A stretch of DNA of 64,000 bases from NCBI RefSeq assembly GCF_006345805.1, contig NC_043002.1, positions 10,664,001 to 10,728,000 on the forward strand. The letters are read 5' to 3'. Shown here in pieces: positions 658-63,656 of the stretch (the first letter of the stretch is position 1; every line of letters begins with the position of its first letter). A model generated the notes under the pieces. It worked only from the letters and a program-made list of their open reading frames with translations. It had not been told where the DNA came from and made no database searches. The position numbers were made by a program, and so were the translations under genes. The stretch comes from Octopus sinensis. Lineage: Eukaryota.

Positions 658-1209
658 ACTGCGTCTGTCATCATAGAGATGGGAATGTTAAGAGAAACGA
701 AAGACCGTAGGAACAATGAACCATTCTCGAAAAGAAGAAAAGAAAGCGGAAGGATTTAAGTAAGATCCAGGAAATATGGAGAAGAAATATAAGGCTTAAT
801 TAAAGTGAACAGAAGTGAAGGAATAAGACAAACCACTTGGTGGAGAGGGGTAATTCTAGGTAAATCGGTTGCGTTAGACTCAAAAGATCAAAGAGAATAA
901 TGTTAAGATCAAAAAGATTTGAGGAAAGATGCTAATAGATAACTAAAAAGAACAAAGGAAATTAGAAAGAAAATAAATCATCTTTTCTATTATAGACACA
1001 AGGCCCGAAGTTGTTGGTGAAGAAGTCTGCTGGACTGCATCACATCAGACCTAGTGACCGACTGGTGGTTATTTTATCGATTCCGAAAGGATAGAAGACA
1101 GAGTCAGCCTCGACGTGCTAATGATTGTACACCGCCTTATTATGAAGAATAACAACAACAACAACAACAACAACAGTAGTAGTAATAATAATAATGATAA
1201 TAATAATAA

Positions 1210-1740
1210 TCCTTTCTAGTATAGGCACAAGGCCTGAAATATTTGTGGGAGAAGATGAGTCGATTACAATCGACCTAATTTTATCGACCCCGAAAGGATG
1301 AAAGGCAAAGTCGACCTAGGCGGAATTTGAACTCAGAACGTAGCGACCCGCGAAATACCTATTTCTTTACTACCCACAAGGGGCTAAAAACAGAGAGGAC
1401 AAACAAGGACAGACAAACGGATTAAGTCGATTATATCGACTCCAGTACGAAACTGGTACTTAATTTATTGACCCTGAAAGGATGAAAGGCAAAGTCGACC
1501 TCGGCAGAATTTGAACTCAGAACGTGGCGGCAGATGAAATACCTATTTCTATACTACCCACAAGGGGTTAAAGACAGACAGGACAAACAAGGACAGACAA
1601 ACGGATTAAGTCGATTATATCGACCCCAGTGCGTAACTGGTACTTATTTAATCGACCCGGAAAGGATGAAAGGCAGAGTCGACCTCGGCAGAATTTGAAC
1701 TCCGAACGTAGCGGCAGACGAAATACCGCTAAGCATTTCG
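1210..1740 (-). mobile_element. SINE-B stack: partial head + two T1 modules + terminal T2 module
   Basis: Three ~180-bp repeats with B-box GAGTTCAAATTCC and core gcctttcatcctttcggggtcgat on the minus strand. Confidence 0.9.
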
Positions 1741-2705: not shown

Positions 2706-3099
2706 CATTATTAATAATAACGTCAACATTATCAACAACAACGACAATAACAATAACATCAACAACAACAACAACAACAACAAGAATAATGATAATAATA
2801 ATGGAACATTTATCTGTGGAGTTAGCAAATCGATTTTGTTTGCTATTATGAATTTGTTCGCTGATGTTCATCGACAAATAGGAACGTCAGTGGTGGCGAT
2901 GGTCGCGGCTGTGGTTGGGATAGGCGGTGTCTGGGGAGCTCACGGAATGTTAATAGGGTATGCCGGAGGAGATAGCATGACAAGGGGTATTATCTGCAAT
3001 TATAGATATGATGCATTACATGGAGATAAGGATTATATGATTATGTACAGTATTCCATTCACCATATTATAGAAAACGAGAGAAAAGAAAATCTCACTG

Positions 3100-6084: not shown

Positions 6085-6680
6085 CTGTCTATATGAGGAG
6101 TAGAAAGACAGTGGACAACTTATTCTTTGTAAGCCTAGTACTTATTATGTCGGTCTCTTTGGCCGCACCGCTAGGTACGGGGAGGTAAACACACCAGTAT
6201 CGGTTGTCAAGTGGTGTTGTGTGTGTGTGTGTGGAAGGTAACCAACACAGACACACAAACACACACACACATATATATTTATATACATAAGACGGACTTC
6301 TTTAAGTTTCCTTCTACCAAATTCACTCACAAGGCTTTGGCCGCCTGGAGGCCATAGTAGAAGACACTTGTCACGCAGTGGAACTGAACCCAGAACCATG
6401 TGGTTGGTAGGCAAGCTACCTACCAAACAGCCACTCCTGCGCCTATGCACAACCACTCCTATACACACACAACACACACACACATATATATTTATATACA
6501 TAAGACGGGCTTCTTTAAGTTTCCTTCTACCAAATTCACTCACAAGGCTTTGGCCGCCTGGAGGCCATAGTAGAAGACACTTGTCACGCAGTGGAACTGA
6601 ACCCAGAACCATGTGGTTGGTAGGCAAGCTACCTACCAAACAGCCACTCCTGCGCCTATGCACAACCACTCCTATACACA
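6085..6680 (-). mobile_element. SINE-C with its 5' half tandemly duplicated (~213 bp period)
   Basis: Two near-identical head halves sharing the same deletion in the CORE-like segment, bounded by (CA)n. Confidence 0.85.
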
Positions 6681-6789
6681 CACACACACACACACACCCT
6701 TTGATACTTTGATGGGTTCGGCCAGCATTGGCCCAGGCCATGTCTAACTTAATAGCACCACCTGGTGTAGTCGTTCAAATCAGGATCCA

Positions 6790-10734: not shown

Positions 10735-11295
10735 ATCCTTTCTACTGAAGGCACAAGGCCTTGAAATTTCGGTACTAGTCTGTTACATCAACTCCAGTGT
10801 CTCACTGGTACTTCATTTGTCGACCCCGGAAAGATGAAAGGCAAAGTCGACCTCGGCGGAATTTGAACTCAGAATGTAACGACGGGCGAAATACCTATTT
10901 CTTTACTACCCACAAAGGGCTAAACACAGCGAGGACAAACAAGGACAGACAAACGGATTAAGTCGATTATATCGACCTCAGAGCGTAACTAGTACTTATT
11001 TATCGACCCCGAAAGGATGAAAGTCAAAGTCGACCTCGGCGGAATTTGAACTCAGAAGACATAGCGGCAGACGAAATACCTATTTTTTTAGTACTCACAA
11101 GGGGCTAAACACCGAGGGGACAAACAAGGACAGACAAAGGGATTAAGTCGATTACATCGACTCCAGTGCGTAACTAGTACTTAATTTATCGACCCCGAAA
11201 GGATGAAAGGTAAAGTCGACCTCGGCGGAATTTGAACTCGGAACGTAATGACAGACGAAATACCGCTAACAATTCTGCAGCTCGCCGCCTTATAA
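10735..11295 (-). mobile_element. SINE-B stack: short head + T1 + T1 + T2 modules
   Basis: Three tandem modules joined at gaaata|ggtat. Confidence 0.9.
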
Positions 11296-12418: not shown

Positions 12419-12447
12419 AATTCACATGGTAGTTATTTATAATTAGT

Positions 12448-12860
12448 ACGGCAGTGAGCAGGCAGAGACGTTAGCACGCCGGGCGAAATGCTTACCATTA
12501 TTTCGTCTGGCGTTACGTTCTCAGTTCAGATTCCGCCGAGGTCGACTTTGCCTTTCATCCTTTCGGGGTCGACTAAATAAGTACCAGTTACGCACTGGGG
12601 GCGATATAATCGACTTAATCCGTTTGTCTGTCCTTGTTTATCCTCTCTGTATTTAGCCCCTTGTGGGTAGTAAAGAAATTAGTATTTCATCTGCCGCTAC
12701 GTTCTGAGTTCAAATTCCGCCGAGGCCGACTTTGACCTTCATCCTTTCGGGGGCGATAAATTAAGTACCAGTTGCGTACTGGAGTCGATCTAATTGACTG
12801 ACTCCCTCTCCAGAAAAAACTTCGGGCTTTGTGTCTAGAGTAGAAAAGATTATTTATTTA
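12448..12860 (+). mobile_element. SINE-B stack: head + T1 + T2
   Basis: Two modules; ends gtctagagtagaaaagattatt. Confidence 0.9.
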
Positions 12861-12872
12861 TTATTATGTTTA

Positions 12873-13270
12873 GAAGGCGGCGAGCTGGCAGAAACGTTAG
12901 CACGCCGGGCGAACTCGTAGCGGAATTTCGTCTGCCGTTACGTTCTGAGTTCAAATCCAGCCGAGGTCGACTTTGCCTTTCATCCTGTCGGGGTCGATTA
13001 AATATGTACCAGTTACGCACTGGGGTCGATATAATCGACTTAATCCGTTTGTCTGTCCTTGTTTGTCCTCTCTGTGTTTTTGCCCCTTGTGGGTAGTAAA
13101 GAAATGTGTATTTTGTCTGTCTTTACATTCTGAGTTCAAATTCTACCGAGGTCGACTTTGCTTTTAATCCCTTTGGGGTCGATAAATTAAGTACAAGTTG
13201 CATACTGGAGTCCATCTAATCAATTGGCCCCTCACCAAATGTTCCGGGCCTTGTGTCTAGAGTAGAAAAG
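12873..13270 (+). mobile_element. SINE-B stack: head + T1 + T2
   Basis: Immediately downstream of the previous stack, same architecture. Confidence 0.9.
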
Positions 13271-14151
13271 TTATTTACAATTAGTCGAACCTGGACCGCA
13301 CAGGTCGAAACCAATAGCGTATTGCGAACCGTGATCATTCGGACTACAATAGAATACAATATTAACTCAAATACGGCACACGTCTATTAACTAGTCAGCG
13401 TACCAATCACGTTATTTGGGGGTTTCTTGATCTTAATGATTGATAAAGTTGAGTGAATAAGTACACAAATAACTACAAATAAATACTGAAGAAAAAAACC
13501 CATACACAGCAAAAAGTAAATCATGCTATTAATATAATCTTTAAATCGATTTAGAACAGTGATTTATGTAGCTACAGACGAGAGGTCTAAGGATTAGGCT
13601 GCAAACAAGTGTATTTTTACTATATCTTTCCTCGTGTAGTTAATTTCCCAAACTTATCTAACATTTCGATCAACAAACATAACATTAAGTTGATTGATAT
13701 TTTTGAACTGAGACTCGCAACTAGCCATGTTGAAAGGTAGTTGGACGGCCTAACAAGCAGATACAATCCGCAACGTATTGCTTCCTATTGAAGTGACCTG
13801 CTGCACTGACTATTAATAGTTATGTTGGTTTTAGCTAACATAACAGTAAGACGCACGCAATGCATGCCAGGACTTTCATTAATGTATATTACTGATTTCA
13901 CATTCTGCCGTATGCGAAATGGCGAAATCATTAACTTGAAGATCAATGGGTTACACGTGACGTGCATCTCTACGTCAATAGTTCTTGATATGAAGAAGTG
14001 GAGTTAAAGTTGTGTTCGAGATGTTTCCACTGATTCTTTCGAATTATGAGTAAAATTAACCCCCAATGTCACGGGGGGTAATTTTACTGCTAGTCACCTG
14101 CGCAATGTGACTATTTCGAAGGAGATAATGATAAAAAATTAGGTAAATACT

Positions 14152-14713: not shown

Positions 14714-15131
14714 AAAGGCGGCGAGCTGGCAAAACCGTTAGCACGCCGGGCGAAATGCTTAGCGGTATTTCGTCTGTCGTTACGTTCTGAGTTCAATTTC
14801 CGCCGGGGTCGACTTTGCCTTTCATCCTCTCGGGGTCGATAAATAAAGTACCAGTTACGCACTGGGGTCGATGTAATCGACTTAATACCTATGTCTGTCC
14901 TTGTTTGTCCCCTCTGTGTGTAGCCCCTTGTGGGTAATAAAGAAATAGGTATTTCGTCTGCCGCTACGTTCTGAGTTCAAATTCCGCCGAGGTCGACTTT
15001 GCCTTTCATCCTTTCGGGGTCGATTAAATAAGTACCAGTTACACACTAGGGTCGATATAATCGACTTAATCTCTTTGTCTGTCCTTGTTTGTCCCCTCTA
15101 TGTTTAGCCCCCTGTGGACAATAAAGAAATA
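14714..15131 (+). mobile_element. SINE-B stack: head + T1 + T1-variant module
   Basis: Imperfect TSD aatatgt(t/c)aaatt; last module ends ggacaataaagaaata. Confidence 0.9.
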
Positions 15132-15832: not shown

Positions 15833-16066
15833 TATTTCTTTACTACCCACATGGGGCTAAAGATAGAGAGGACAAACAAGGACAGACAAACGGATTAAGT
15901 CGATTATATCGACTCCAGTGCGTAACTGCTACTTATTTAATCGACCCCGAAAGGATGAACGGCAAAGTCGATCTTAGCGGAATTTGAACTCAGAACGTAG
16001 CGGCAGACGAAATACTGCTAAGCATTTCGCCCGGCCTGCTAACGATTCTGTCAGCTCGCCGCCTTA
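15833..16066 (-). mobile_element. SINE-B monomer, T1 tail, perfect 15-bp TSD
   Basis: aacttcgttcatacc at 15818-15832 and 16067-16081. Confidence 0.95.
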
Positions 16067-16139
16067 AACTTCGTTCATACCACTCTGCAGTTACTATAAA
16101 CTTTTTCACCAGCACAAGTATTTCTTGGTTAACTATCTG

Positions 16140-17010
16140 AGCAGCCTGTGAAGGTTCGTGGCTTCGCGATTAGAATATTCGATCGCATGGTCGCGATTTC
16201 GATTCTTGGCGCTGCGTTTTATCCTTAAGCAAGACACTTTATTTCACGTTGCTCTCGTGACTTCTGCTGTCGAAAATGAGTTGTACCTGTATTTGAAAAC
16301 ACTCAGCCTTGTTGCACTTTGTGCTATGCTTAATCTGTCTCAAATCTGCGTTCCGGGTACACGTGTCTGTGGAGTGCTCAGCTACATGCATTTAAATTTG
16401 TCGGGTATTTTTTAAGTAAGAGGCCAGAAAATTCTTATCATACAAAGTGGTATTGAAAAAAGTTCCCTGATTAGTTATGTTGGATCTTTTCGGTTTGAAC
16501 GGCAGTTTTTAACATGATTTCTAGGTAACTAAAAAATTTTAAATTTCGTATACTGGTAGAATGTGTTTATAAAACATCTTTTTCTCTTGGCTTTATTGAG
16601 AACATTCTATTGTTTGTAAGATATTTGTTGTTTTTTCTTCAATTTCTGCAATTTCTACCAATCAATGACGTCCATTGAGGTAAAAAAACATACTGTGCCG
16701 TATGAATATGTCCCTCGTTTACGAAACAGTTTGGGTTTATTTACATTTGTGAAGAAAAAAAGATACCCTTCCCCCCCACTCCTAACCCTAAAACAGAATG
16801 AAATGCAATAGATCGATATTAGGGTCATAATTATGGGTGACAATTTCATACGACACTGCTAGAAAAAACTGCCGTTCAAACCGAAAAGATCAGTTATGTT
16901 TAGTAAAAAAATAACTTATTTACCTAATTTTTAACATCAATGATCAACGCTAGCAGGCTGTTCCGTCGATCAAATCAACTGGAACGCTTAACGACATAGC
17001 CGACAGATTC
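16140..17010 (+). mobile_element. Old SINE (CORE-like middle, A1-type tail) interrupted by DNA-transposon sequence
   Basis: gggtacacgtgtctgtggagtgctcagc near 16357; remainder gcaggctgttccgtcgatc near 16953. Confidence 0.6.
16482..16892. mobile_element. MITE with ~28-bp TIRs and 8-bp TSD (Merlin-like by termini)
   Basis: TIRs ggatcttttcggtttgaacggcagttttt / aaaaaactgccgttcaaaccgaaaagatca; gttatgtt on both sides. Confidence 0.85.
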
Positions 17011-17125
17011 GCCAGTATATTTGAGCATCCAACATGATCTCGTTTCCTTTAGTCCACTTTAGTGTGCTGCCAGCGTTTGAAATATATCGGATTCACTGCA
17101 GGTCAAAATGCTTCGAAACACCGAC

Positions 17126-17419: not shown

Positions 17420-17752
17420 ATACTTTTCTACTATAGGCACAAGGCTCGAAATTTTTAGGGAGGGGACCAGTCGATTAGATCGATCCCAGTACGCAACATA
17501 TATATTTCTTTACTACCCACAAGGGGCTAAACATAGTGGGACAAACAAGGACAGACAAAGGGATTAAGTCAATTACATCGACCCAGTATGCAACATATAC
17601 TTAATTTATCGACCCCGAAATGATGAAAGGCAAATTGGACCTCGGGGAAATTTGAACTCAGAACATAAAGACAGACGAAGTACCGCTAACGTTTCTTATT
17701 TCTTTATTGTCCACAAGGGACTAAACATAGAGGGGACAAACAAGGACAGACA
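17420..17752 (-). mobile_element. SINE-B stack (partial T1-variant, T1, partial T2)
   Basis: Modules recognisable on the minus strand. Confidence 0.75.
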
Positions 17753-17837
17753 AGGATCAAGGAAACATCAGCAAATAAATGGACTTATTTGAGTACGGAC
17801 TGGCAGTCAAAAGGCCCTGTGCGTCTGAGTGCATAAA

Positions 17838-17870: not shown

Positions 17871-18098
17871 ACGGCGAGCTGGCAGAAACGTTAGCACGCC
17901 GGGCGAAATGCGTAGCCGTATTTCGTCTGCCGTTACGTTCTGGGTTCAAATTCCGCCGAGGTCGACTTTGCCTTTCATCCTTTCGGGGTCGATTAAATAA
18001 GTACCAGTTACGCACTCGAGTCGATTTAATCGACTTAATCCGTTTGTCTGTCCTTGTTTGTCCCCTCTGTGTTTAGCCCCTTGTGGGTAGTAAAGAAA
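17870..18098 (+). mobile_element. SINE-B monomer, T1 tail
   Basis: Near-consensus head, core and tail; sits in microsatellite. Confidence 0.9.
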
Positions 18099-18344
18099 TA
18101 TATATATGTGTGTGTGTGCGCGCGACGTGTGTGTATGTGTGTATACGGCGAGCTTCCACAAAGTTTCTGCCTACCAAATTGAGTAACAAGTTACTTGTCG
18201 GTTAAAGCAGAAAAGTAGAAATACTTGCCTAAGACGCAGAGCAACTAAGCCGAACCCGAAGCCACGTAGATATAAAGCTGCTTAACCACACAACTATTGC
18301 AGTTGTAACATATATTCTTTTTTATTCTTAGTTGAGCAAATCTA

Positions 18345-24297: not shown

Positions 24298-24300
<3 letters not shown>
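23395..24300 (-). mobile_element. Non-coding retroposon-like repeat (~570 bp) with (AAT)n/(CAA)n tail, interrupted by a 328-bp insert
   Basis: Flanked by trinucleotide arrays; continuity restored when 23901-24248 is removed; recalled as a common octopus repeat (not verified). Confidence 0.55.
23901..24228. other. GC-richer orphan insertion flanked by a perfect 20-bp direct repeat
   Basis: acatgataacacttccaatc at 23881-23900 and 24229-24248. Confidence 0.85.
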
Positions 24301-24357
<57 letters not shown>

Positions 24358-24362
24358 TTATG

Positions 24363-24730
24363 GGTTTTTCTTCTTCTTTCAAATCTGCTTCCACTTCTTG
24401 CCGAGTGTCTTCCCGACTCCTAGGGCAAAGAAACTCATAGTATACATTGGTAGGCCATTAAACTAAACTCACTAGTTCGTTCATTTTTTTTTAAGTTAAA
24501 TTAAAATACATGGGTAGTAATAGTTCTCACAGCGACAATGCTCTTCTCAATACGTGTGATGTACCAGTTAAGACAATATTTTGCTCTTCTTGCAGGGATG
24601 GTAAGCCAGGGATCATTCTCATTTAATTTTCGGTTCCCTTCTTGATCATTCCTAGTGCTCCTACGATCACTGGTACTGTAACCGCCTTGAGATGCCACAT
24701 TTTCTCAATTTCAATGAACAGGTCTTTATA

Positions 24731-24817
<87 letters not shown>

Positions 24818-25187
24818 TTTTCCCCTTCTTTCAAATTTGCTTCCATTTCTTGCCGAGTGTCTCCCGACTCCTAGGGCAAAGAAACTCATAGTATACATTG
24901 GTAGGCCATTAAACTAAACTCACTAGTTCGTTCATTTTTTTTTAAGTTAAATTAAAATACATGGGTAGTAATAGTTCTCACAGCGACAATGCTCTTCTCA
25001 ATACGTGTGATGTACCAGTTAAGACAATATTTTGCTCTTCTTGCAGGGATGGTAAGCCAGGGATCATTCTCATTTAATTTTCGGTTCCCTTCTTGATCAT
25101 TCCTAGTGCTCCTACGATCACTGGTACTGTAACCGCCTTGAGATGCCACATTTTCTCAATTTCAATGAACAGGTCTTTATATTTTTA

Positions 25188-25267
<80 letters not shown>

Positions 25268-25340
25268 TTCCCCTTCTTTCAAATTTGCTTCCATTTCTTG
25301 CCGAGTGTCTTCCCGACTCCTAGGGCAAAGAAACTTATAG
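24363..25340 (-). mobile_element. RLE-type LINE 3' end, tandemly duplicated (451-bp period) plus a third short tail, in (TTA)n
   Basis: KYKDLFIEIEKMWHLKAVTVPVIVGALGMIKKG...GTSHVLRRALSL*; identical ORFs at 24501 and 24952. Confidence 0.85.
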
Positions 25341-25358
25341 TTATTATTATTATTATTA

Positions 25359-27212: not shown

Positions 27213-27388
27213 ATAATTCTAAATTCTAATTTCCTAACTGACCCTATTCGTTTTCATTTAACCACTTAACGGCACTTACACTCATACACATGCACATGCG
27301 GTCACGTGTACACACATGTGAACAATACGGAGTAGTTGCGATGAATCAGTGCGGTTAGTACGAATAGTTGTGCATTGTCAAGTATGGC

Positions 27389-27820
27389 GAAGGCGGCGAG
27401 CTGGCAGAATCGTTAGCACGCAGGGCGGAATGCTTAGCTGTATTTCGCCCGTCGTTATGTTCTGAGTTAAAATTCCACCGAGGTCGACTTTGCCTTTCAT
27501 CCTTTCAGGATCGATTAAATAGGTACCAGTTACGCATTGGGATCGATGTAAGTAACTTAATCCATTCCTCCAAATTGGAGGCCTTCTGCTTCCAGTAGAA
27601 AGTATTATTAATGTTGATATGTAGTGAACTGCCAGAATCGTTATCACACCTGGCGAAATGCTTGGCGGCATTTCGTCTGTCTTCATGTTCAGAGTTCAAA
27701 TTCCTCCGTGGTCGATTTTGACTTTCATCTTTTCGGGGTCGATAAATCAAGAACAATATACGAAACTGGGATCGATGTAATCGACTGGTCCCCGCCTCAA
27801 AAATTCCAGGCCCCATGTTA
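27389..27820 (+). mobile_element. Two tandem SINE-B T2 monomers
   Basis: Two heads, cores and T2-like tails. Confidence 0.8.
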
Positions 27821-27821
27821 A

Positions 27822-28260
27822 TAAGGCGGTGATCTAGCAGAATCATTAACACACTGGACGGAATGCTTTGCGGTATTTTGCCCGTCGAAGGCGGCGAGCT
27901 GGCAGAAACGTTAGCACGCCGGGCGAAATGCTGAACGGTATTTCATCTGCCGTTACGTTCTGAGTTCAAATTCCGCCGAAGTCGACTTTACATTTCATCC
28001 TTTCGGGGTCGATTAAATAAGTACCAGTTACGCACAGGGGTCGATATAATCGACTTAATCCGTTTGTCTATCCTTGTTTGTCCTCTCTATGTTTATCCCT
28101 TGTGGGTAGTAAAGAAATAGGTATTTTGGCCGTCGATACTTTCTGACTTCAAATTCCGCCTAGGTCGACTTTGCCATTCATCCTCTCGGGGTCGATAAAT
28201 TGAGTACCAGTGAAACACTGGGGTCGATGTGAGCGACGTTATCCCCACCCCCAAGTTGCA
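27822..28260 (+). mobile_element. Old SINE-B (T2) split by a young full-length SINE-B (T1) at 27889-28119
   Basis: 17-bp TSD ggtattttg(c/g)ccgtcga at 27872-27888 and 28120-28136. Confidence 0.9.
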
Positions 28261-28789
28261 CTTGGGGCAAAAATATGAAATCATTTTGTCTAGTATGGTT
28301 ACCATAAAGGTGAATGCGAACGGCCTACTGGTTAGTGGAGTTGCAGTCACAATCGTGGTTTTAATTTCACAACCGACTGGTGCGTAATGTTTTTAAGCAA
28401 AGCATTTCGTCAGACGCTGCTCTGCGATCCCTTCGACACTGGACATGTGGTATTGGCACTCCGGCGGTTTCGTCCTTCGTTTTCCATTTAGACTGCCAAA
28501 CATTGTCCGACCGATGATAACTCTGTTGTTTGACGCAGTCTAAATGGTAAACGGAGTCGTTAGCAGTCGGACAATTTTAACAGTATTTTTTCGCCGGCTC
28601 TAAATTCAAATGCCGCAGAGGTCGACCTTGAATTTCATTTGGGATCGATAAGATAAGAACCAGTCAGGTCCTGGGATCGCTGTAACTGATTGCCCCACTT
28701 CTTTCACAATTGCAGGCCTTGTGTCCAAATTGATACAAATTGGAAGGCGAAGAGCTGGCAAAATCGTTAGCACGTCGGACAAAATACGT

Positions 28790-30235
28790 ATCCTTTTTCT
28801 TTTCTTTTAGTTGTTTCGGCCATTTGACTGCGGCCATGCTGGAGCACCAATTTTAGTCGAACAAATCGACGCCCCCCAGGACTTATTTTTTGTAAGCCTA
28901 GTGCTTATTCTATCGGTCTCTTTTGCCGAACCGCTAAGTAAACACACCAGCATTGGTTGTCAAGCGAGAGTGGGGGACAAACACAGACACAAATAACAAA
29001 CACACACATACATACATATATCCGTCTACCAAATCCACTGACAAGGCTTTGGTCGGCCCGAGGCTATAGTAGAAAACACTCGCCCAAAGTGCCATGCAGT
29101 GGAAGTATGGAAGGCCAGCGGTGCCAAAATCACAAAGTATGGAAGGCCAGCCGTGCCCAAATCACAAAGTATGGCAGGCCAGTGGTGCCAAAATTGCTGA
29201 AAAATTTTTAGGGAAAATTTTCAGTGAAAATTTTCGAAAAATTTTTGGGGAAGATTTTCGGTGAAAATTTTCGAAAAATTTTAGGGAAAATTTTCAGTGA
29301 AAATTTTCGAAATATTTTTGGGGAGAATTTTCTAAAAATCACAAGGCCAGCGGTGCCAAAATAACAATGTATGGAAGGCCAGCGGTGCCAAAATCACAAA
29401 GTATGGGAGCCCAGCGGTGCCAAAATCACAAAGTATGGAAGGCCAGCGGTGCCAAAATCACAAAGTATGGAAGGTCAGCGGTGCCAAAATCAAAACGTAT
29501 GGAGGCCAGCGGTGCCAAAATCAAAAAGTATGGAAAGCCAGCGGTGCCAAAATCAAAAAGTATGGAAGGCCAGCTGTGCCAAAATTGGTGAAAAATTTTT
29601 CGGGAAAATTTTCAGTGAAAATTTTCGAAAAATTTTTAGGGAAAATTTTCGATGAAAATTTTCGGTGAAAATTTTCGAAAAAATTTTTAGGGAAAATTTT
29701 CGTAAAACCTTTGGGGAAAATTATCGGTGAAAATTTTCGTAAAATACTTGGGGAAAATTTTTGGAAAAATTTTCGAAAAATTTTCGAGTAAATTTCGGTA
29801 AAAATTTTCGAAAAACCATTGGGGAAAATTTTCGGTGAAAATTTTCGTAAAATATTTGGGGAAAATTTTCGAAAAATTTTTGAGTAAAATTTTCGAAAAT
29901 TGTTTGGGGAAAATTTTCTAAAAATCACAAGGCCAGCGGTCCCAAAATCTCAATGTATGGAAGGCCAGCGGTGCCAAAATCACAATGTATGGAAGGCCAG
30001 CGGTGCCAAAATCCCAAAGTATGGAAGGCCAGCGGTGCCAAAATCCCAAAGTATGGAAGGCCAGCGGTTCCAAAATCACAATGTATGGAAGGCCAGCGGT
30101 ACCAAAATCGGTGAAAAATTTTTCGGGAAAATTTTCAATGAAAATTTTCGAAATATTTCCGGGAAAAGTTTTCGGTGAAAATTTTCGAGAAATTTTTGGA
30201 TGAGAAGCGAGTTTCTTACCACACAGCCACGCATC
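28790..30235 (-). mobile_element. SINE-C split by a minisatellite block
   Basis: Body ends gtgccatgcagtgg at ~29102; head resumes gagaagcgagtttcttaccacacagccac at ~30202. Confidence 0.8.
29101..30199. repeat. Composite minisatellite: blocks of a 32-bp unit alternating with GAAAATTTTC-rich blocks
   Basis: Unit aagtatggaaggccagcggtgccaaaatcaca; order A-B-A-B-A-B. Confidence 0.95.
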
Positions 30236-30807: not shown

Positions 30808-31230
30808 ATGGCTCAGATCCATCTATATGGCTCAGAAACATGGACGTTATCAAAGAAGCTTGAGAGGCGGTTGGATGGAACTTACACTCGCCTCCTTATG
30901 AGAGCTCAAAATCTCTCGTGGAAGCGCCATCCAACCAAAATGCAAATATATGGGAAACTACCACCTGTATCATCTCTTGTGAAAGGTAGAAGTGTCCAGT
31001 TTGCTGGACATTGTTGTAGAGCTGAAAACGAGGTAATTTCTACTTTTCTCCTCTGGAAGCCATCTGCTCGCGATACCAGAGGGCACACACTCTTCTACCC
31101 TGATGTAATCTCCAGGGATACAGGCATCCAGCAACAGGACCTCGGTAATGCTATGATGGGCCGTGAAGTCTGGCGTAGCATAGTAAATTCCATTGTCTCG
31201 ACCACGGTCGAATAATGATGATGATGAAGA
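30808..31230 (+). mobile_element. 5'-truncated RTE-clade LINE 3' end (open C-terminal frame)
   Basis: LYGSETWTLSKKLERRLDGTYTRLLMRA...QFAGHC...REVWR; (GAT)n tail. Confidence 0.9.
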
Positions 31231-37074: not shown

Positions 37075-40283
<3,209 letters not shown>

Positions 40284-41221
40284 GTTTTCGATCAAAAGGG
40301 ATCTTAAAAAAAAAAGATAGATAGATAGATAGATACGCTCGCCTGCATACATACATGCAATTTTGAGTGTGTGTCTGTCCACGCGTGCGGTGTAAAGAAA
40401 AACATTTTTAAAGAGAAATTTATAGAAATCAATAGGAACCTTTCTAAAAACGTTTCGTCAGTTACATGTACTTGATACTCCCCAACATGACAGCAATGGC
40501 TAATTAACAATCTTCATATCGCAACACATTATTTTAAGCTGTTTATCGCTACCATCTTCTGCTTGATTGATACCAACCGATATGGAAAGCTAGTACATCC
40601 AGTAATTAAAACAAAAAGAAAAAAAGCTTCCATTTGGGATCAAATTAATAATTTAATTGTTTTCATATTTTGGCCTGTTTTGGAAATTCTTTAAGAAAAA
40701 ATATAAAAAATATAAAATACTGGGAATTGCTATTTGGGAACTGTGTCATTATATGACATTTTTGTATCTTCGTTAACAAGAACAAAAAACAAGAAAAAGA
40801 CACGTGTAATGATACTGATTAGAGGAGCAATTTTAAAGAAGAGAATTTTTCAAACATTAAAGCTAATTTTCCCTGCTGCCCACTGGAAATCAAATGCGAT
40901 GTGATTGTTTAGTAATAGTCTCTAAATGAATGACATTAAGTCAATTACAAGACAGAAAAAGTTTTAATCTGAAGAAACTGTAGAAAATTGTGATGGAGTG
41001 GGGTGGGGGTAAGAGGTAAGGCAAAGAAATCTAATTGGTCGAAGTTAAAAGAAAATGCGGAAAGAAATGATGTAAATAAAATAATTTATGCATGTGTATT
41101 TAATTTTTATATATATTTATGTATCTGTGTGTGCATTTGTACATTTGATTATTTCTGAGTGCGTGGTCGAATGAGCATCTAATTTTAAAATTGCTACATA
41201 CATATATGCATATATATATAT

Positions 41222-49409: not shown

Positions 49410-49828
49410 TATTTCTTTACTACCCACAAGGGGCTAAACACAGAGAGGACAAACAAGGACAGAAAAACGGATTAAGTCGATTATATCGACCCCAGTGCGT
49501 AACTGATACTTAATTTATCGACCCCGAAAGGAGGAAAAGCAAAATCGACCTCGATGGAATTTGAACTCGGAACATAGCGGCAGACGAAATACCTATTTCT
49601 TTACTGCCCACAAGGGGCTAAACGCAGAGAGGACAAACAAGGACAGACAAACGGATTGAGTCGATTATATGGACCCCAGTGCGTAACTGGTACTTATTTA
49701 ATCGACTCTGAAAGGATAAAAGGCAAAGTCGACCTCAGAGGAATTTGAACTCAGAAAGTAACGGCAGACGAAATACGGCTACGCATTTCGCCCGGCGTGC
49801 TAACGTTTTTGCCAGCTCGCCGCCTTTT
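49410..49828 (-). mobile_element. SINE-B stack: head + T1 + T1, with 15-bp TSD
   Basis: tg(c/t)gaaccaagtacc at 49395-49409 and 49829-49843. Confidence 0.9.
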
Positions 49829-50665: not shown

Positions 50666-50996
50666 TATACATACATACAGACATGCATATTCACACACAC
50701 ACATACGAATAAAATAGCTCACAAATATAATAGCTTCATTCTATATTTCATCACTGATATACTCTGTAATTACCATACCAAATTACTAATTGCTGCTGGT
50801 CTTCGAATTTTCATTTTCTACCAGATAGATGCAAATAACCTATACAGACTGCTATTGCCTTTAGTAGGTTATTAACCGGGTTTATTACACGGGTCCCTTA
50901 TTGAGACCCGTATAATAACCTGAGCATTTTCCCTTTTCGGAACTGGCCATGGCATGAATATGAATGAAATAGACAAATACTGGTATGCTAAATACC

Positions 50997-51221
50997 TATT
51001 TCTTTACTACCCACAAGGGGCTAAATACAGAAGGGACAAACAAGGACAGACAAACGGATTAAGTCGATTGCATCGACCCCAGTGCGTAACTGGTACTTAC
51101 TTAATCAACCCTGGTAGGATGAAAGGGAAAGTCGACATCGGCGGAATTTGAACTCAGAACGTAACGGCAGACGAAATACGGCTACGCATTTCGCCCGGCG
51201 TGCTAACGTTTCTGCCAGTTC
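50997..51221 (-). mobile_element. SINE-B monomer, T1 tail
   Basis: Short TSD gcta(a)atacc at 50987-50996 and 51222-51230. Confidence 0.9.
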
Positions 51222-51671
51222 GCTAATACCTGACAACAAAAGTTCTTCATTTATTAAAATTATCTGCGCCTCTTGACAGTGTACCGTTATTAACAAATAA
51301 TAATTATGATCAGCTACACTTGAAAAGAAGTCAGCTCAAGATTTAAGATTTCCCCAAAGAGATTCGTATTGAGGAAAGGGACAGATTTATTACCTGGAGG
51401 CAAGACGACAATTATGGACACTTGCTTCTGGTTAAGTAGCCTTTATCAGCACGACTATTGTCAAGCAACGGGTGCTGAAAAGTTGCTGGCTTTAAGGGTA
51501 TCGCGAAAGACTCGACCTTCCGAGTTCTTTTAAAGCGTTTAGTAAAACCTAAGGACCGCTGAGGTAAGTGTGTGGATCTGAAAGGGGAATAAGTTGAATA
51601 AAATCATAATCCTCCTGCATTTTATTTTACCCAAAGCCACCAACTTTTCAGCAACCCCACGTATATATATA

Positions 51672-63129: not shown

Positions 63130-63298
63130 ACAAACAAGAACGGACGAAGGGATTAAGTCGATTATATCGACCCCAGTGCGTAACTGGTACTTAATTTATC
63201 GACTGCGAAAGGATGAAAGGCAAAGTTGACCTCGGCGGAAGACGAAATACGGCTACGCATTTCGCCCGGAGTACTAACGTTTCTGCCAGCTCGCCACC
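63130..63298 (-). mobile_element. SINE-B, internally deleted and truncated
   Basis: Head and core joined across a deletion of the B-box region. Confidence 0.75.
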
Positions 63299-63656
63299 TT
63301 CTCTACGTCTGTTTCGCCACTGTCTCTCTATGTCTGTTTCTGCATCTCTGTCACGCTCTATCTCTCCCTTTCTTTTTTCTTTCATTTCCCTTTCTTACTT
63401 TCCTTATTTATTCATTTATTTCTCTCTCTCTCTCTCTCCTTCCCTCTTAGTATATTTCTGCTTATGTGTCTGGGGAGAGACAATGTATTTATGTTAATAG
63501 CATTCAATTAGTAAATCGTAATGTCTCTCTCCTCTCCTTTTTCCTGTATCTCTCTCCCCATCCCACCCCTCTTTTTTTCAATGAGCACATTTCTCTGAAT
63601 GTGTATGAGGGGGGAGAAAATATTTATGTGAATCGACTTCGATTAATAAATTAGAA

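What the first reader, a model, noticed from the sequence alone, without database searches (positions are those of the whole stretch)
27822..28260. A SINE inserted into the anticodon arm of its own family, with the TSD preserved
Seen: an old diverged SINE-B head stops at gc|ggtattttgcccgtcga, a young full-length T1-tailed copy follows, then ggtattttggccgtcga repeats and the old T2 body resumes. The cut position is the same junction (gaaata|ggtatttc) that joins modules in all head-(module)n stacks of the window. Inference: the stacks form by repeated targeted self-insertion, usually joined seamlessly through homology between cDNA and target, rather than by ordinary tandem duplication. I do not know of a description of this for these SINEs, but cannot check the literature.
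Basis: partly seen in the sequence, partly recalled or inferred. Interest (0 to 1): 0.8.

Follow-up and report, generated by a model that had tools for sequence, protein, structure and literature searches.

The report
SINE nested in its own family
A young copy of an octopod short interspersed element (SINE) has jumped into an older relative at the exact internal site where copies of this family are joined into short arrays, which hints, without proving it, that the arrays are built by retrotransposition rather than by tandem duplication.

Summary
A full-length 231-bp young SINE (27889-28119, "T1" tail) sits in the same orientation inside an older "T2"-tailed SINE. It is flanked by a 17-nt target-site duplication (27872-27888 / 28120-28136, 16/17). 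Joining the two old halves restores a colinear element.

In favour:
- The insertion point, SINE position 50 (GGTATTTCG), is the only GGTAY in the SINE.
- Four of the six T1 insertions into non-SINE DNA have duplications that start with GGTAY.
- Ten of 18 T1 3' ends abut position 50 of another copy.
- Adjacent modules are not each other's closest relatives, so tandem duplication in place is rejected.
- T2 end modules are older than the T1 modules upstream of them.
- A second locus (17485-17599) shows a 5'-truncated T1 joined in register, with an 18-nt duplication carrying a private variant. This is the proposed seamless mechanism, seen directly once.

Against or unresolved:
- Heads match the first module, not the oldest one.
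- First and second modules form position-specific subtypes, as multimeric master copies would.
- Template switching by the reverse transcriptase is not excluded.
- No further octopus sequence could be reached.

Moderately interesting: a new variant of known SINE multimers.

The parts
27823..27871 (+). Head (SINE positions 1-49) of the old, diverged T2b-tailed SINE
   Evidence: Aligns with the heads of the other T2 copies and carries the T2 mark T at position 22 (gaaTca). It is 77% identical to the young head.
27872..27888 (+). Upstream copy of the target-site duplication: GGTATTTTGCCCGTCGA (old SINE positions 50-66)
   Evidence: Direct repeat D3 of the repeat finder. Its best match among 31 copies is the downstream copy, 16/17.
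27889..28119 (+). Young full-length T1a SINE, 231 bp. Head 27889-27936, position-50 site at 27937, T1 tail about 28060-28119, ending gtagtaaagaaata
   Evidence: It is the BLAST query itself; other T1 copies are 88-92% identical to it. It lies 4.5% from the T1 consensus. Both ends coincide with the family ends.
28120..28136 (+). Downstream copy of the target-site duplication: GGTATTTTGGCCGTCGA. Its TTTT would also act as an RNA polymerase III stop just after the T1 tail (inference)
28137..28285 (+). Remainder of the old SINE: body from position 67 and a T2b-type tail (..ggggcaaaaatatgaaatcatt)
   Evidence: Colinear with the T2 copies once joined to 27823-27888. It lies 12.5% from the T2 consensus.
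27388..27815 (+). Two further old T2 SINEs in the same orientation just upstream (27388-27600 and 27620-27815). The old host SINE appears to sit in the tail of the second
   Evidence: The nesting in the tail was read by eye only.
17485..17599 (-). Second DNA-level T1-into-SINE event. A 79-bp 5'-truncated T1 3' part (17503-17581) lies between two copies of tatatgttgcRtactggg (17582-17599 and 17485-17502) and is joined in register with the host T2c SINE
   Evidence: The 17/18 repeat carries a private variant (tatat in place of tacca) seen in no other copy. Upstream of it the sequence continues as T1, downstream as T2c.
1200..1740 (-). Stack A: 5'-truncated head, two T1 modules, one T2a end module
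   Evidence: period 184, 90% matches.
10735..11291 (-). Stack B: head lacking positions 29-48 (T-type), two T1 modules, one T2 end module
   Evidence: period 185, 85% matches.
12450..13275 (+). Stacks C and D: each is a T1a head, one T1a module and a T2c end module. Junctions read gaaatt|agtatttc and gaaatg|tgtatttt
14715..15131 (+). Stack E: head and two T1 modules inside one duplication, aatatgtYaaattSata
49410..49826 (-). Stack I: a2-type head, an a-type module and a b-type module inside one duplication, ggtacttggttcRcaa
55366..55769 (+). Stack K: head, an a-type module and a b-type module. The duplication starts ggtat/ggcat and ends ..tacggaag

Best explanation
**The locus (shown).** An older T2b-tailed SINE was resident. 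A younger, full-length T1a SINE later inserted into it in the same orientation by target-primed reverse transcription. The bottom strand was nicked just left of GGTAT at SINE position 50 and the top strand 17 nt downstream. This gave the 17-nt duplication and a visible second head, because here the 5' end of the new copy was joined without using homology.

**Why that site (shown as a pattern; mechanism inferred).** T1 integration prefers targets whose duplication begins with GGTAY, or less often WATAT. The SINE has exactly one GGTAY, at position 50. It lies in the 3' arm of the head hairpin and reads GGTATTTCG.
- The preference may come from the nicking enzyme of the partner LINE (long interspersed element).
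- Alternatively it may come from pairing of the nicked DNA with T1 RNAs that run a few bases past the tail into ...GGUAUUU. The T1 consensus has no TTTT stop, and copies lying upstream of a ggtatttt variant would end in just that way.

**The stacks (inferred).** T1 cDNA primed at this site in a resident copy is homologous to the DNA on the other side of the break. Its 5' end is therefore usually joined in register, through the duplicated overhang or through annealing along the head, leaving head-(module)n with no second head. One such in-register join is directly visible at another SINE position (17485-17599). Multimers made in this way have no internal polymerase III stop, so they can probably also be copied as units. 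That would explain the position-specific module subtypes.
For: **The locus**
- duplication 16/17, host colinear after removal of the insert, insert ends equal the family ends, insert 4.5% versus host 12.5% diverged.

**Target motif**
- There are 18 T1 3' ends in the window (plus F). Six lie in non-SINE DNA.
- Four of those six duplications start with GGTAY and two with AATAT or TATAT. GGTAY is also present in the upstream copy of three of these four duplications (K has ggcat), so it belongs to the target.
- P(at least 4 of 6) = 5e-11 at the window's GGTAY frequency, and the T1 consensus has one GGTAY, at position 50.
- Position-50 sites reading GGTAT are joined to a T1 tail more often than sites with another pentamer: 8 of 14 against 2 of 16, P = 0.019.

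**Retrotransposition, not tandem duplication**
- All ten junctions use the exact T1 terminus.
- Identity within an array is 85-90%. Nearest neighbours are mostly in other stacks.

**Order of events**
- In all five T2-ended stacks the T2 module is more diverged (10.5-17%) than the T1 modules upstream of it (4.5-9.8%).
- The T2 end modules belong to different T2 subtypes, so at least four or five junctions arose independently.

**Join through homology**
- At 17485-17599 an 18-nt duplication carries a private variant and the truncation point is in register.
- An ENA scaffold (L003) shows a further seamless T1-to-T2c junction at body position about 126, with a flank starting AATAT.
- No antisense T1 sits at the SINE's GTACC (position 134), although GGTAC is a used target. 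Position 50 is occupied about 20 times more often than other GGTAY sites: 8/14 against 4/159, P = 8e-8. Both facts point to a role for homology or an extended motif beyond the pentamer.

**Known basis**
- Microhomology-assisted 5' attachment in target-primed reverse transcription is established for L1 and Alu (PMC1920257, citing Zingler et al. 2005).
Against: - Heads go with the first module. Stacks C and D (T2c end module) and stack I (b-type end module) have heads of the young a type (A at position 22; gcGtagcCg in I), not of the oldest module. Simple retention of the old head predicts the opposite; the model then needs heteroduplex repair or annealing along the whole head.
- In the T1-to-T2 stacks A, B and D, the first 17 nt of the upstream module are T1-like, not copies of the T2 start (12-13 of 17). 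Any duplication there is at most 9 nt, whereas T1 duplications are usually 15-19 nt.
- First modules cluster with first modules (I1-K1) and second with second (A2-K2-B2-I2). Multimeric masters would give this pattern.
- 'Upstream is younger' fails in stacks B and E.
- More than half of all T1 3' ends are at position 50, which is a lot for independent hits.
- The sample is one 64-kb window with eight stacks. Only one double-head case and one in-register case are proven at the DNA level.
Confidence: 0.5

Rival explanations
1. Template switching during a single retrotransposition event. The reverse transcriptase copies one SINE RNA from its 3' end to about position 50, either because the RNA ends or is blocked there or because the new cDNA end ...ATACC-3' resembles the preferred primer. 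It then continues on the 3' end of a T1 RNA, and so on. The last template is copied through its head. The whole stack enters the genome at once, inside one duplication.
For: - Heads match the first module in stacks C, D, I and K.
- No T2-specific sequence is duplicated at the T1-to-T2 junctions.
- Stacks E, I and K each lie inside a single duplication.
- The junction always uses the exact T1 3' end.
- Reverse transcriptases of non-LTR elements are known to switch templates (PMC1920257, PMC4758252).
Against: - It cannot explain the finding itself: old head plus 17-nt duplication, and a host three times more diverged than the insert.
- It cannot explain 17485-17599, where a private variant is present in both repeat copies.
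- It predicts solo headless modules starting at position 50. None of the six primary T1 insertions stops there.
- It needs the T2 machinery and T1 RNA to be active together, yet no T2-T2 stack is seen, and the T2 end modules are older than their T1 neighbours in 5 of 5 stacks.
- It gives no reason why duplications in non-SINE DNA start with GGTAY.
Confidence: 0.2
2. Multimeric master copies. A few head-module-module elements arose once, by whatever means, and are transcribed through, since no TTTT lies inside them. They are then retrotransposed as units, so most T1-T1 junctions are inherited rather than made anew at each locus.
For: - Module subtypes are position-specific: an a-type first module and a b-type second module in stacks A, I and K.
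- Nearest neighbours are I1-K1 (0.051) and A2-K2 (0.053).
- Whole dimers are flanked by one duplication.
- The T1 consensus has no polymerase III stop.
Against: - The heads of I (a2 type) and K (a1 type) differ. The trees of first modules ((I1,K1),A1) and second modules ((A2,K2),I2) do not mirror each other (small sample).
- It cannot account for the T1-to-T2 junctions, which involve T2 modules of different subtypes and greater age.
- It also cannot account for the finding itself.
- It explains how stacks spread, not how they first arise.
Confidence: 0.2
3. Ordinary tandem duplication, unequal crossing-over or replication slippage of a 184-bp unit in place, as proposed for SINE-derived satellites and tandem-like SINE arrays in other animals.
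For: - Tandem Repeats Finder reports arrays of period 184-185.
- The architecture (first unit with a head, later units truncated at the same head position, one duplication pair) matches arrays described in a blood clam and in squamates (PMC11481361, PMC10702118).
Against: - Adjacent modules are not each other's closest relatives, and identity within an array equals identity between arrays.
- Units of one stack carry different tails (T1 then T2) and different subtypes.
- Every unit boundary coincides with the exact retrotransposition terminus of T1.
Confidence: 0.03
4. For the locus alone: a chance neighbourhood. A standard head-T1-T2 stack happens to lie just downstream of an unrelated, 3'-truncated old head fragment, so the 17-nt repeat is family homology and not a target-site duplication.
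For: - Head-T1-T2 stacks exist elsewhere (A, B, C, D).
- Positions 50-66 are homologous in all copies, so some similarity is expected. Another copy (B3) reaches 15/17.
Against: - The old head ends exactly 17 nt past the junction position, a typical T1 duplication length.
- Its 17-mer is best matched by the downstream copy among 31 copies. The two share the gcccgtcg-type subtype, the T at position 8 and the A at position 17.
- Head and body are similarly old, and they join without a gap.
- Fragments that keep only the 5' part are not what 5'-truncating retrotransposition produces.
Confidence: 0.05

Closest known systems
Tandem-like SINE arrays of the form TSD1-(SINE)n-TSD1 in the blood clam Scapharca broughtonii (PMC11481361), and SINE-derived satellites of squamate reptiles (PMC10702118)
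   Same: The first unit has a complete tRNA-related head and later units are all truncated at the same head position. The whole array lies inside one duplication pair. Unit length is about 150-185 bp.
   Different: In those cases internal units are also truncated in the tail, arrays can be long and homogeneous, and unequal recombination is the proposed cause. Here each unit runs to the exact 3' terminus of the SINE. Units of one array differ in subtype, tail and age. Arrays have 2-3 units, and two loci show target-site duplications at the junction.
Microhomology-mediated 5' end attachment in target-primed reverse transcription of L1 and Alu (Zingler et al. 2005, as cited in PMC1920257), and, from memory, chimeric L1 formation by recombination of nascent cDNA with a resident L1 (Gilbert et al. 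2002; Symer et al. 2002)
   Same: The 5' junction of a new insertion is set by pairing between the cDNA and the DNA on the other side of the break. If that DNA is a resident copy of the same family, the product is a seamless chimera.
   Different: In the L1 cases the resident copy is usually some distance upstream and a deletion results. Here the break itself lies inside the resident copy at a preferred motif, so the outcome is an added module rather than a deletion.
SINE multimers made of full-length units, such as Dip/B1 multimers in jerboas (cited in PMC10702118), and dimeric SINEs such as Alu that amplify as dimers
   Same: Same-orientation, head-to-tail SINE units. Possible amplification of multimers as single transcripts.
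   Different: Those multimers keep every head, because units insert into tails or fuse whole. Here all units after the first lack positions 1-49.
Sequence-specific non-LTR retrotransposons (R1, R2, Tx1, Dong and relatives; from memory), some of which target other repeats. Dong-R4 and L1-Tx1 LINEs are reported as recently active in Octopus vulgaris (PMC13282606)
   Same: A preferred target sequence, and repeated use of the same site in a repeated host sequence, giving same-orientation arrays.
   Different: Specificity here is only partial: 6 of 18 ends lie in varied non-SINE DNA and share only a 5-nt motif. The partner LINE was not identified.
Octopus tRNA-derived SINEs OK, OR1 and OR2 (Ohshima and Okada 1994, cited in PMC4824008 and PMC4758252)
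   Same: An octopod host, a tRNA-like head with a B-box-like motif, and LINE-type tails.
   Different: Their sequences could not be retrieved, so identity with OR1 or OR2 is untested. No description of stacked modules in octopus SINEs turned up in four of the six literature searches run; the other two addressed other questions.

Membership tests
Nested retrotransposon insertion by target-primed reverse transcription | Direct repeat of host sequence immediately flanking the insert | tested here: met
   17 nt, 16/17, at 27872-27888 and 28120-28136.
Nested retrotransposon insertion by target-primed reverse transcription | Insert ends coincide with the family's own 5' and 3' ends | tested here: met
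   It starts aggcggcgagc and ends gtagtaaagaaata, like the solo copies F, H and J.
Nested retrotransposon insertion by target-primed reverse transcription | Host element is colinear once the insert and one repeat copy are removed, and the host is older than the insert | tested here: met
   The joined halves align without a gap at the joint. Host 12.5% and insert 4.5% from their consensus sequences.
Nested retrotransposon insertion by target-primed reverse transcription | An empty site exists in another individual or species | not testable with these tools
   No octopus genome sequence was reachable.
tRNA-derived SINE | Head recognisable as a tRNA, with internal A and B boxes | tested here: inconclusive
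   B-box-like GAGTTCAAATTCC and A-box-like TGGCAGAAACG were read by eye. ARAGORN finds no tRNA and Rfam gives no tRNA match.
tRNA-derived SINE | Short, non-coding, dispersed copies with variable target-site duplications | tested here: met
   About 30 copies in 64 kb. Duplications of about 10-19 nt with different sequences.
tRNA-derived SINE | 3' tail shared with a partner LINE | tested here: inconclusive
   Only a tail-only piece at 17697-17761 was found. SINEs of Argonauta hians share the T1-like tail. No LINE with this tail was found in the window.
CORE-SINE superfamily (includes octopus OR1/OR2) | Central domain of about 65 bp homologous to the MIR core | tested here: inconclusive
The resemblance seen by eye is only a lead.
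SINE-derived tandem array or satellite | First unit with a full head, later units truncated at one head position, all inside one duplication pair | tested here: met
   Stacks E, I and K.
SINE-derived tandem array or satellite | Units of one array are each other's closest relatives (duplication in place, homogenisation) | tested here: not met
   Nearest neighbours lie in other stacks for most modules. Identity within arrays is 85-90%.
Site-specific non-LTR retrotransposition | Nearly all insertions lie at one defined target sequence | tested here: not met
   10 of 18 T1 ends are at SINE position 50, 2 at other SINE positions and 6 in varied DNA. Only a 5-nt motif is shared.
Multimeric master SINE (Alu-like) | Fixed architecture with position-specific diagnostic mutations, and co-inherited units | tested here: inconclusive
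   Position-specific a and b subtypes are present. However, heads differ between stacks I and K, the trees of first and second modules disagree, and only three dimers are available.

The most novel reading that the evidence does not exclude
The T1 SINE and its partner LINE are semi-specific for a motif inside the SINE's own head hairpin (GGTATTTCG). Because the cDNA is homologous to the broken host copy, most such hits are resolved in register. The family therefore grows head-(module)n arrays one module at a time by retrotransposition. This would be a direct, repeatable route from an interspersed repeat to a tandem repeat, possibly reinforced by master copies whose transcripts end in the target motif.
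Probability: 0.4. Interest if true: 0.7.

Novelty: new variant of a known kind. Interest (0 to 1): 0.5.

Why it matters
How interspersed repeats turn into tandem arrays and satellites is usually put down to unequal recombination. Evidence for any other route is scarce.

If octopus SINE arrays are built by in-register self-insertion, several things follow:
- Array growth would be driven by retrotransposition and by sequence, and the order of events could be read from the modules.
- SINE counts and age profiles in octopus genomes, where SINEs make up about 12% of Octopus vulgaris (PMC13282606), would have to be read per module rather than per element.
- Gains of single modules would be usable presence/absence markers.
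- The family would offer a natural system for studying how the 5' end of a cDNA is joined during target-primed reverse transcription.

If multimeric masters or template switching explain the stacks instead, the locus remains an ordinary nested insertion.

Tried and rejected
**Getting more octopus sequence**
- Two pattern scans of metagenome contigs and one of prokaryotic genome contigs gave 0 hits.
- A protein search with an antisense SINE reading frame gave one 543-bp scaffold, L003.
- An exact look-up of the LINE reading frame was not on record.
- Homologues of that LINE protein gave only short contigs, one Argonauta hians locus (L002) and one unrelated locus, L001. The BLAST hits in L001 were low-complexity noise.

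**Recognising the head as a tRNA.** ARAGORN and Rfam, including a permissive run, found nothing.

**Reading stacks C and D as T1a insertions next to already headless T2c modules.** Short repeats (aattagta, atgtKta) sit at the T1a borders. At 7-8 nt they are much shorter than normal T1 duplications, and the flanks are AT-rich, so this was left open.

**A reverse-transcription stop or RNA cut at position 50.** Considered because the site lies next to the loop of a 13-bp hairpin. Not adopted as the main model: no solo headless module exists in the window, and the idea does not explain the GGTAY targets.

**Using CpG decay as a clock.** Dropped, because divergence with and without CpG sites is nearly the same.

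**Pairing between the T1 RNA end (GAAAUA) and the target.** The SINE top strand holds TATTTC, but priming from it would give inverted insertions, and none is seen.

**Literature.** Four of six searches looked for, and did not find, a description of stacked modules in octopus SINEs; addressed other questions. The 1994 paper on octopus SINEs and the 2015 octopus genome paper were not available.

Full report
**What the window is**

The window is AT-rich eukaryotic DNA with no tRNA gene and no Rfam match at gathering threshold. A LINE reading frame at 39256-40356(-) has a zf-RVT domain. Its relatives include proteins of Argonauta hians and Octopus bimaculoides, so the source is an octopod.

The window holds about 30 copies of one SINE group. 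All share a head (positions 1-49, numbered on the 233-bp consensus, which starts one base before the young copy) and a body (50 to about 165). They differ in the tail.
- **T1:** ccgtttgtctgtcc...cttgtgggtagtaaagaaata. These are young copies, 3-9% from their consensus.
- **T2:** several variants ending in ..ccttgtgcc..agtagaaaggattatt(att)n or ..gccaaaatttgaagtcatt. These are older, 10-29% from a pooled consensus.

**The observation**

It is correct in every detail.
- Old head: 27823-27871, followed by GGTATTTTGCCCGTCGA at 27872-27888.
- Young full-length T1a copy: 27889-28119.
- Second repeat copy: GGTATTTTGGCCGTCGA at 28120-28136.
- The rest of the old body and its T2b tail run to about 28285.

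Four lines of evidence say it is a real nested insertion.
- The joined old halves align colinearly with other T2 copies.
- The 17-mer at the end of the old head is best matched, among 31 copies, by the 17-mer after the insert: 16/17, then 15/17 and 14/17 from copies of the same subtype. The young copy's own 17-mer scores 11/17.
- Seventeen nt is a normal duplication length for this family, which ranges from about 10 to 19 nt.
- The insert is 4.5% diverged and the host 12.5%.

I rate a chance neighbourhood of an orphan head and a standard stack at about 5%.

**The site**

The window has 18 T1 3' ends (plus copy F).
- Ten abut position 50 of another copy. Seven junctions read gaaata|ggtatttc exactly, one has a variant tail end (aaaata|ggtatttc), and two read gaaatt|agtatttc and gaaatg|tgtatttt.
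- Two abut other SINE positions.
- Six lie in non-SINE DNA.

Of those six, four have duplications that begin with GGTAY (ggtatgaacgaagtt, ggtacttggttcRcaa, ggtatt(t)agc, ggtataacg...). The other two begin with AATAT or TATAT. GGTAY is also present in the upstream copy of three of the four (the fourth, K, reads ggcat there), so it belongs to the target and not to the element. At the window's GGTAY frequency, four of six has P = 5e-11.

The T1 consensus contains exactly one GGTAY, at position 50, and no TTTT. The site is the 3' arm of a predicted 13-bp hairpin, 33-45 paired with 50-62. That is where an anticodon arm would lie, but no tRNA model confirms it.

Four SINEs with a T1-like tail in an Argonauta hians locus are each followed by TAT or TAA. 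The tail, and some TAT-type target preference, therefore seem old in octopods.

**What the stacks are not**

Tandem Repeats Finder sees arrays of period 184-185. They are not duplications in place.
- Identity within an array (85-90%) equals identity between arrays.
- Nearest neighbours of most modules are in other stacks.
- Units of one stack differ in subtype and even in tail.
- Every unit ends at the exact T1 retrotransposition terminus.

**Evidence for serial insertion at the DNA level**

- In all five T2-ended stacks the T2 module is more diverged than the T1 modules upstream of it.
- The T2 modules belong to different subtypes, so these junctions arose several times independently.
- At 17485-17599(-), a 79-bp 5'-truncated T1 part is flanked by an 18-nt repeat (17/18). 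The repeat carries a three-base private variant found in no other copy. The truncation point is exactly in register with the host T2c SINE.
- An ENA scaffold (L003) shows another seamless T1-to-T2c junction, at an AATAT site.
- Position-50 sites are joined to a T1 tail far more often than other GGTAY sites: 8/14 against 4/159.
- No antisense T1 sits at the SINE's GTACC.

The last two points indicate that homology, or a longer motif such as GGTATTT, adds to the pentamer. One possible source is T1 RNA that reads a few bases past the tail, since there is no internal stop and a ggtatttt variant like the one at 28120 would end transcription there. This is inference.

**Evidence that does not fit simple self-insertion**

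- Heads carry the marks of the first module: A at position 22 in stacks C and D although their end module is T2, and gcGtagcCg in stack I, as in the solo a2 copies.
- In the T1-to-T2 stacks A, B and D, the start of the upstream module is not a copy of the T2 start.
- 'Upstream is younger' holds in three of five T1-T1 stacks.
- First modules (a type) cluster with first modules, and second modules (b type) with second modules.

Annealing along the whole head with repair of the mismatched duplex could reconcile the first two points. That makes the model flexible rather than tested. The last point is what multimeric masters would give. However, the heads of I and K differ, and the two module trees disagree.

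Template switching explains the head pattern. It fails on the two loci proven at the DNA level, on the age gap between T1 and T2 modules, on the absence of solo headless modules, and on the GGTAY targets.

**Comparison with what is known**

- Arrays in which the first unit has a head and later units share one head truncation are described in a blood clam and in squamates, where they are ascribed to unequal recombination (PMC11481361, PMC10702118).
- Microhomology-guided 5' attachment is known for L1 and Alu (PMC1920257).
- In four of the six literature searches run (addressed other questions), I found no description of stacked modules, or of a self-targeted site, in octopus SINEs. The 1994 octopus SINE paper was not available.
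- Membership in the CORE-SINE group could not be shown.

**Verdict**

- It is a new variant of a known kind, and of moderate interest.
- The decisive test is a comparison of orthologous loci between octopus genomes, looking for gains of single modules.

Noticed in passing
window 17485-17599 (-): A 79-bp 5'-truncated T1 piece is joined in register into a T2c SINE. It is flanked by an 18-nt repeat, tatatgttgcRtactggg, that carries a private variant. This is a second, independent insertion into the same SINE family proven at the DNA level.
   Followed up: yes
window 17697-17761 (-): A T1-tail-only piece (variant ggacaataaagaaata, also found in module E2 at 15131) directly abuts head position 17 of the same host SINE. 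It could be a LINE 3' end or a template-switch product.
   Followed up: partly
window 12425-13290 (+): Two head-T1a-T2c units lie inside one flanking repeat, ttatttaYaattagt. Short repeats (aattagta, atgtKta) sit at the T1a borders. The T1 parts are about 90% alike and the T2c parts about 80%. The history of this locus is unresolved.
   Followed up: partly
window 28744-30110 (+): A head-only SINE piece breaks just after GTAT, near position 54. It is followed by a different repeat family and by minisatellites with 32-bp and 37-bp units (29103-30109).
   Followed up: no
window 17872-18100, 50996-51223, 49593-49826, 63130-63300: A T1 subtype (a2, head gcGtagcCg) reads CGTAT instead of GGTAT at position 50. 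None of its four copies has a T1 tail joined at that site.
   Followed up: partly
L002 (Argonauta hians) 1-204, 2729-2990 (-), 15990-16226, 16900-17082: Four SINEs with a different tRNA-like head but a T1-like tail (..cttgtggctaRtaRagaaatM). Each is followed by TAT or TAA, and none is stacked. The tail family therefore appears to predate the split between Octopus and Argonauta.
   Followed up: partly
L003 (ENA metagenome scaffold, 543 bp): Host contamination carrying a T1 element with a T-type head. It is joined seamlessly to a T2c SINE at body position about 126, and the flank starts AATAT.
   Followed up: partly
window 27388-28300 (+): A cluster of same-orientation SINEs. The old host SINE itself seems to sit in the tail of the 27620-27815 copy, because a tail-like tgtctagtatgg resumes after 28285. 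That would make a three-level nest.
   Followed up: no
window 24300-25341 and 6251-6697: Two young tandem duplications unrelated to the SINE: 451 bp x 2.3 copies at 97% identity, and 213 bp x 2.1 copies at 98%.
   Followed up: no
window 39256-40356 (-) and 30808-31215 (+): LINE remnants. The first is a 366-aa reading frame with a zf-RVT domain, surrounded by (TAGA)n arrays. The second is a 135-aa reading frame ending in (ATG)n. Neither carries the T1 or the T2 tail.
   Followed up: partly
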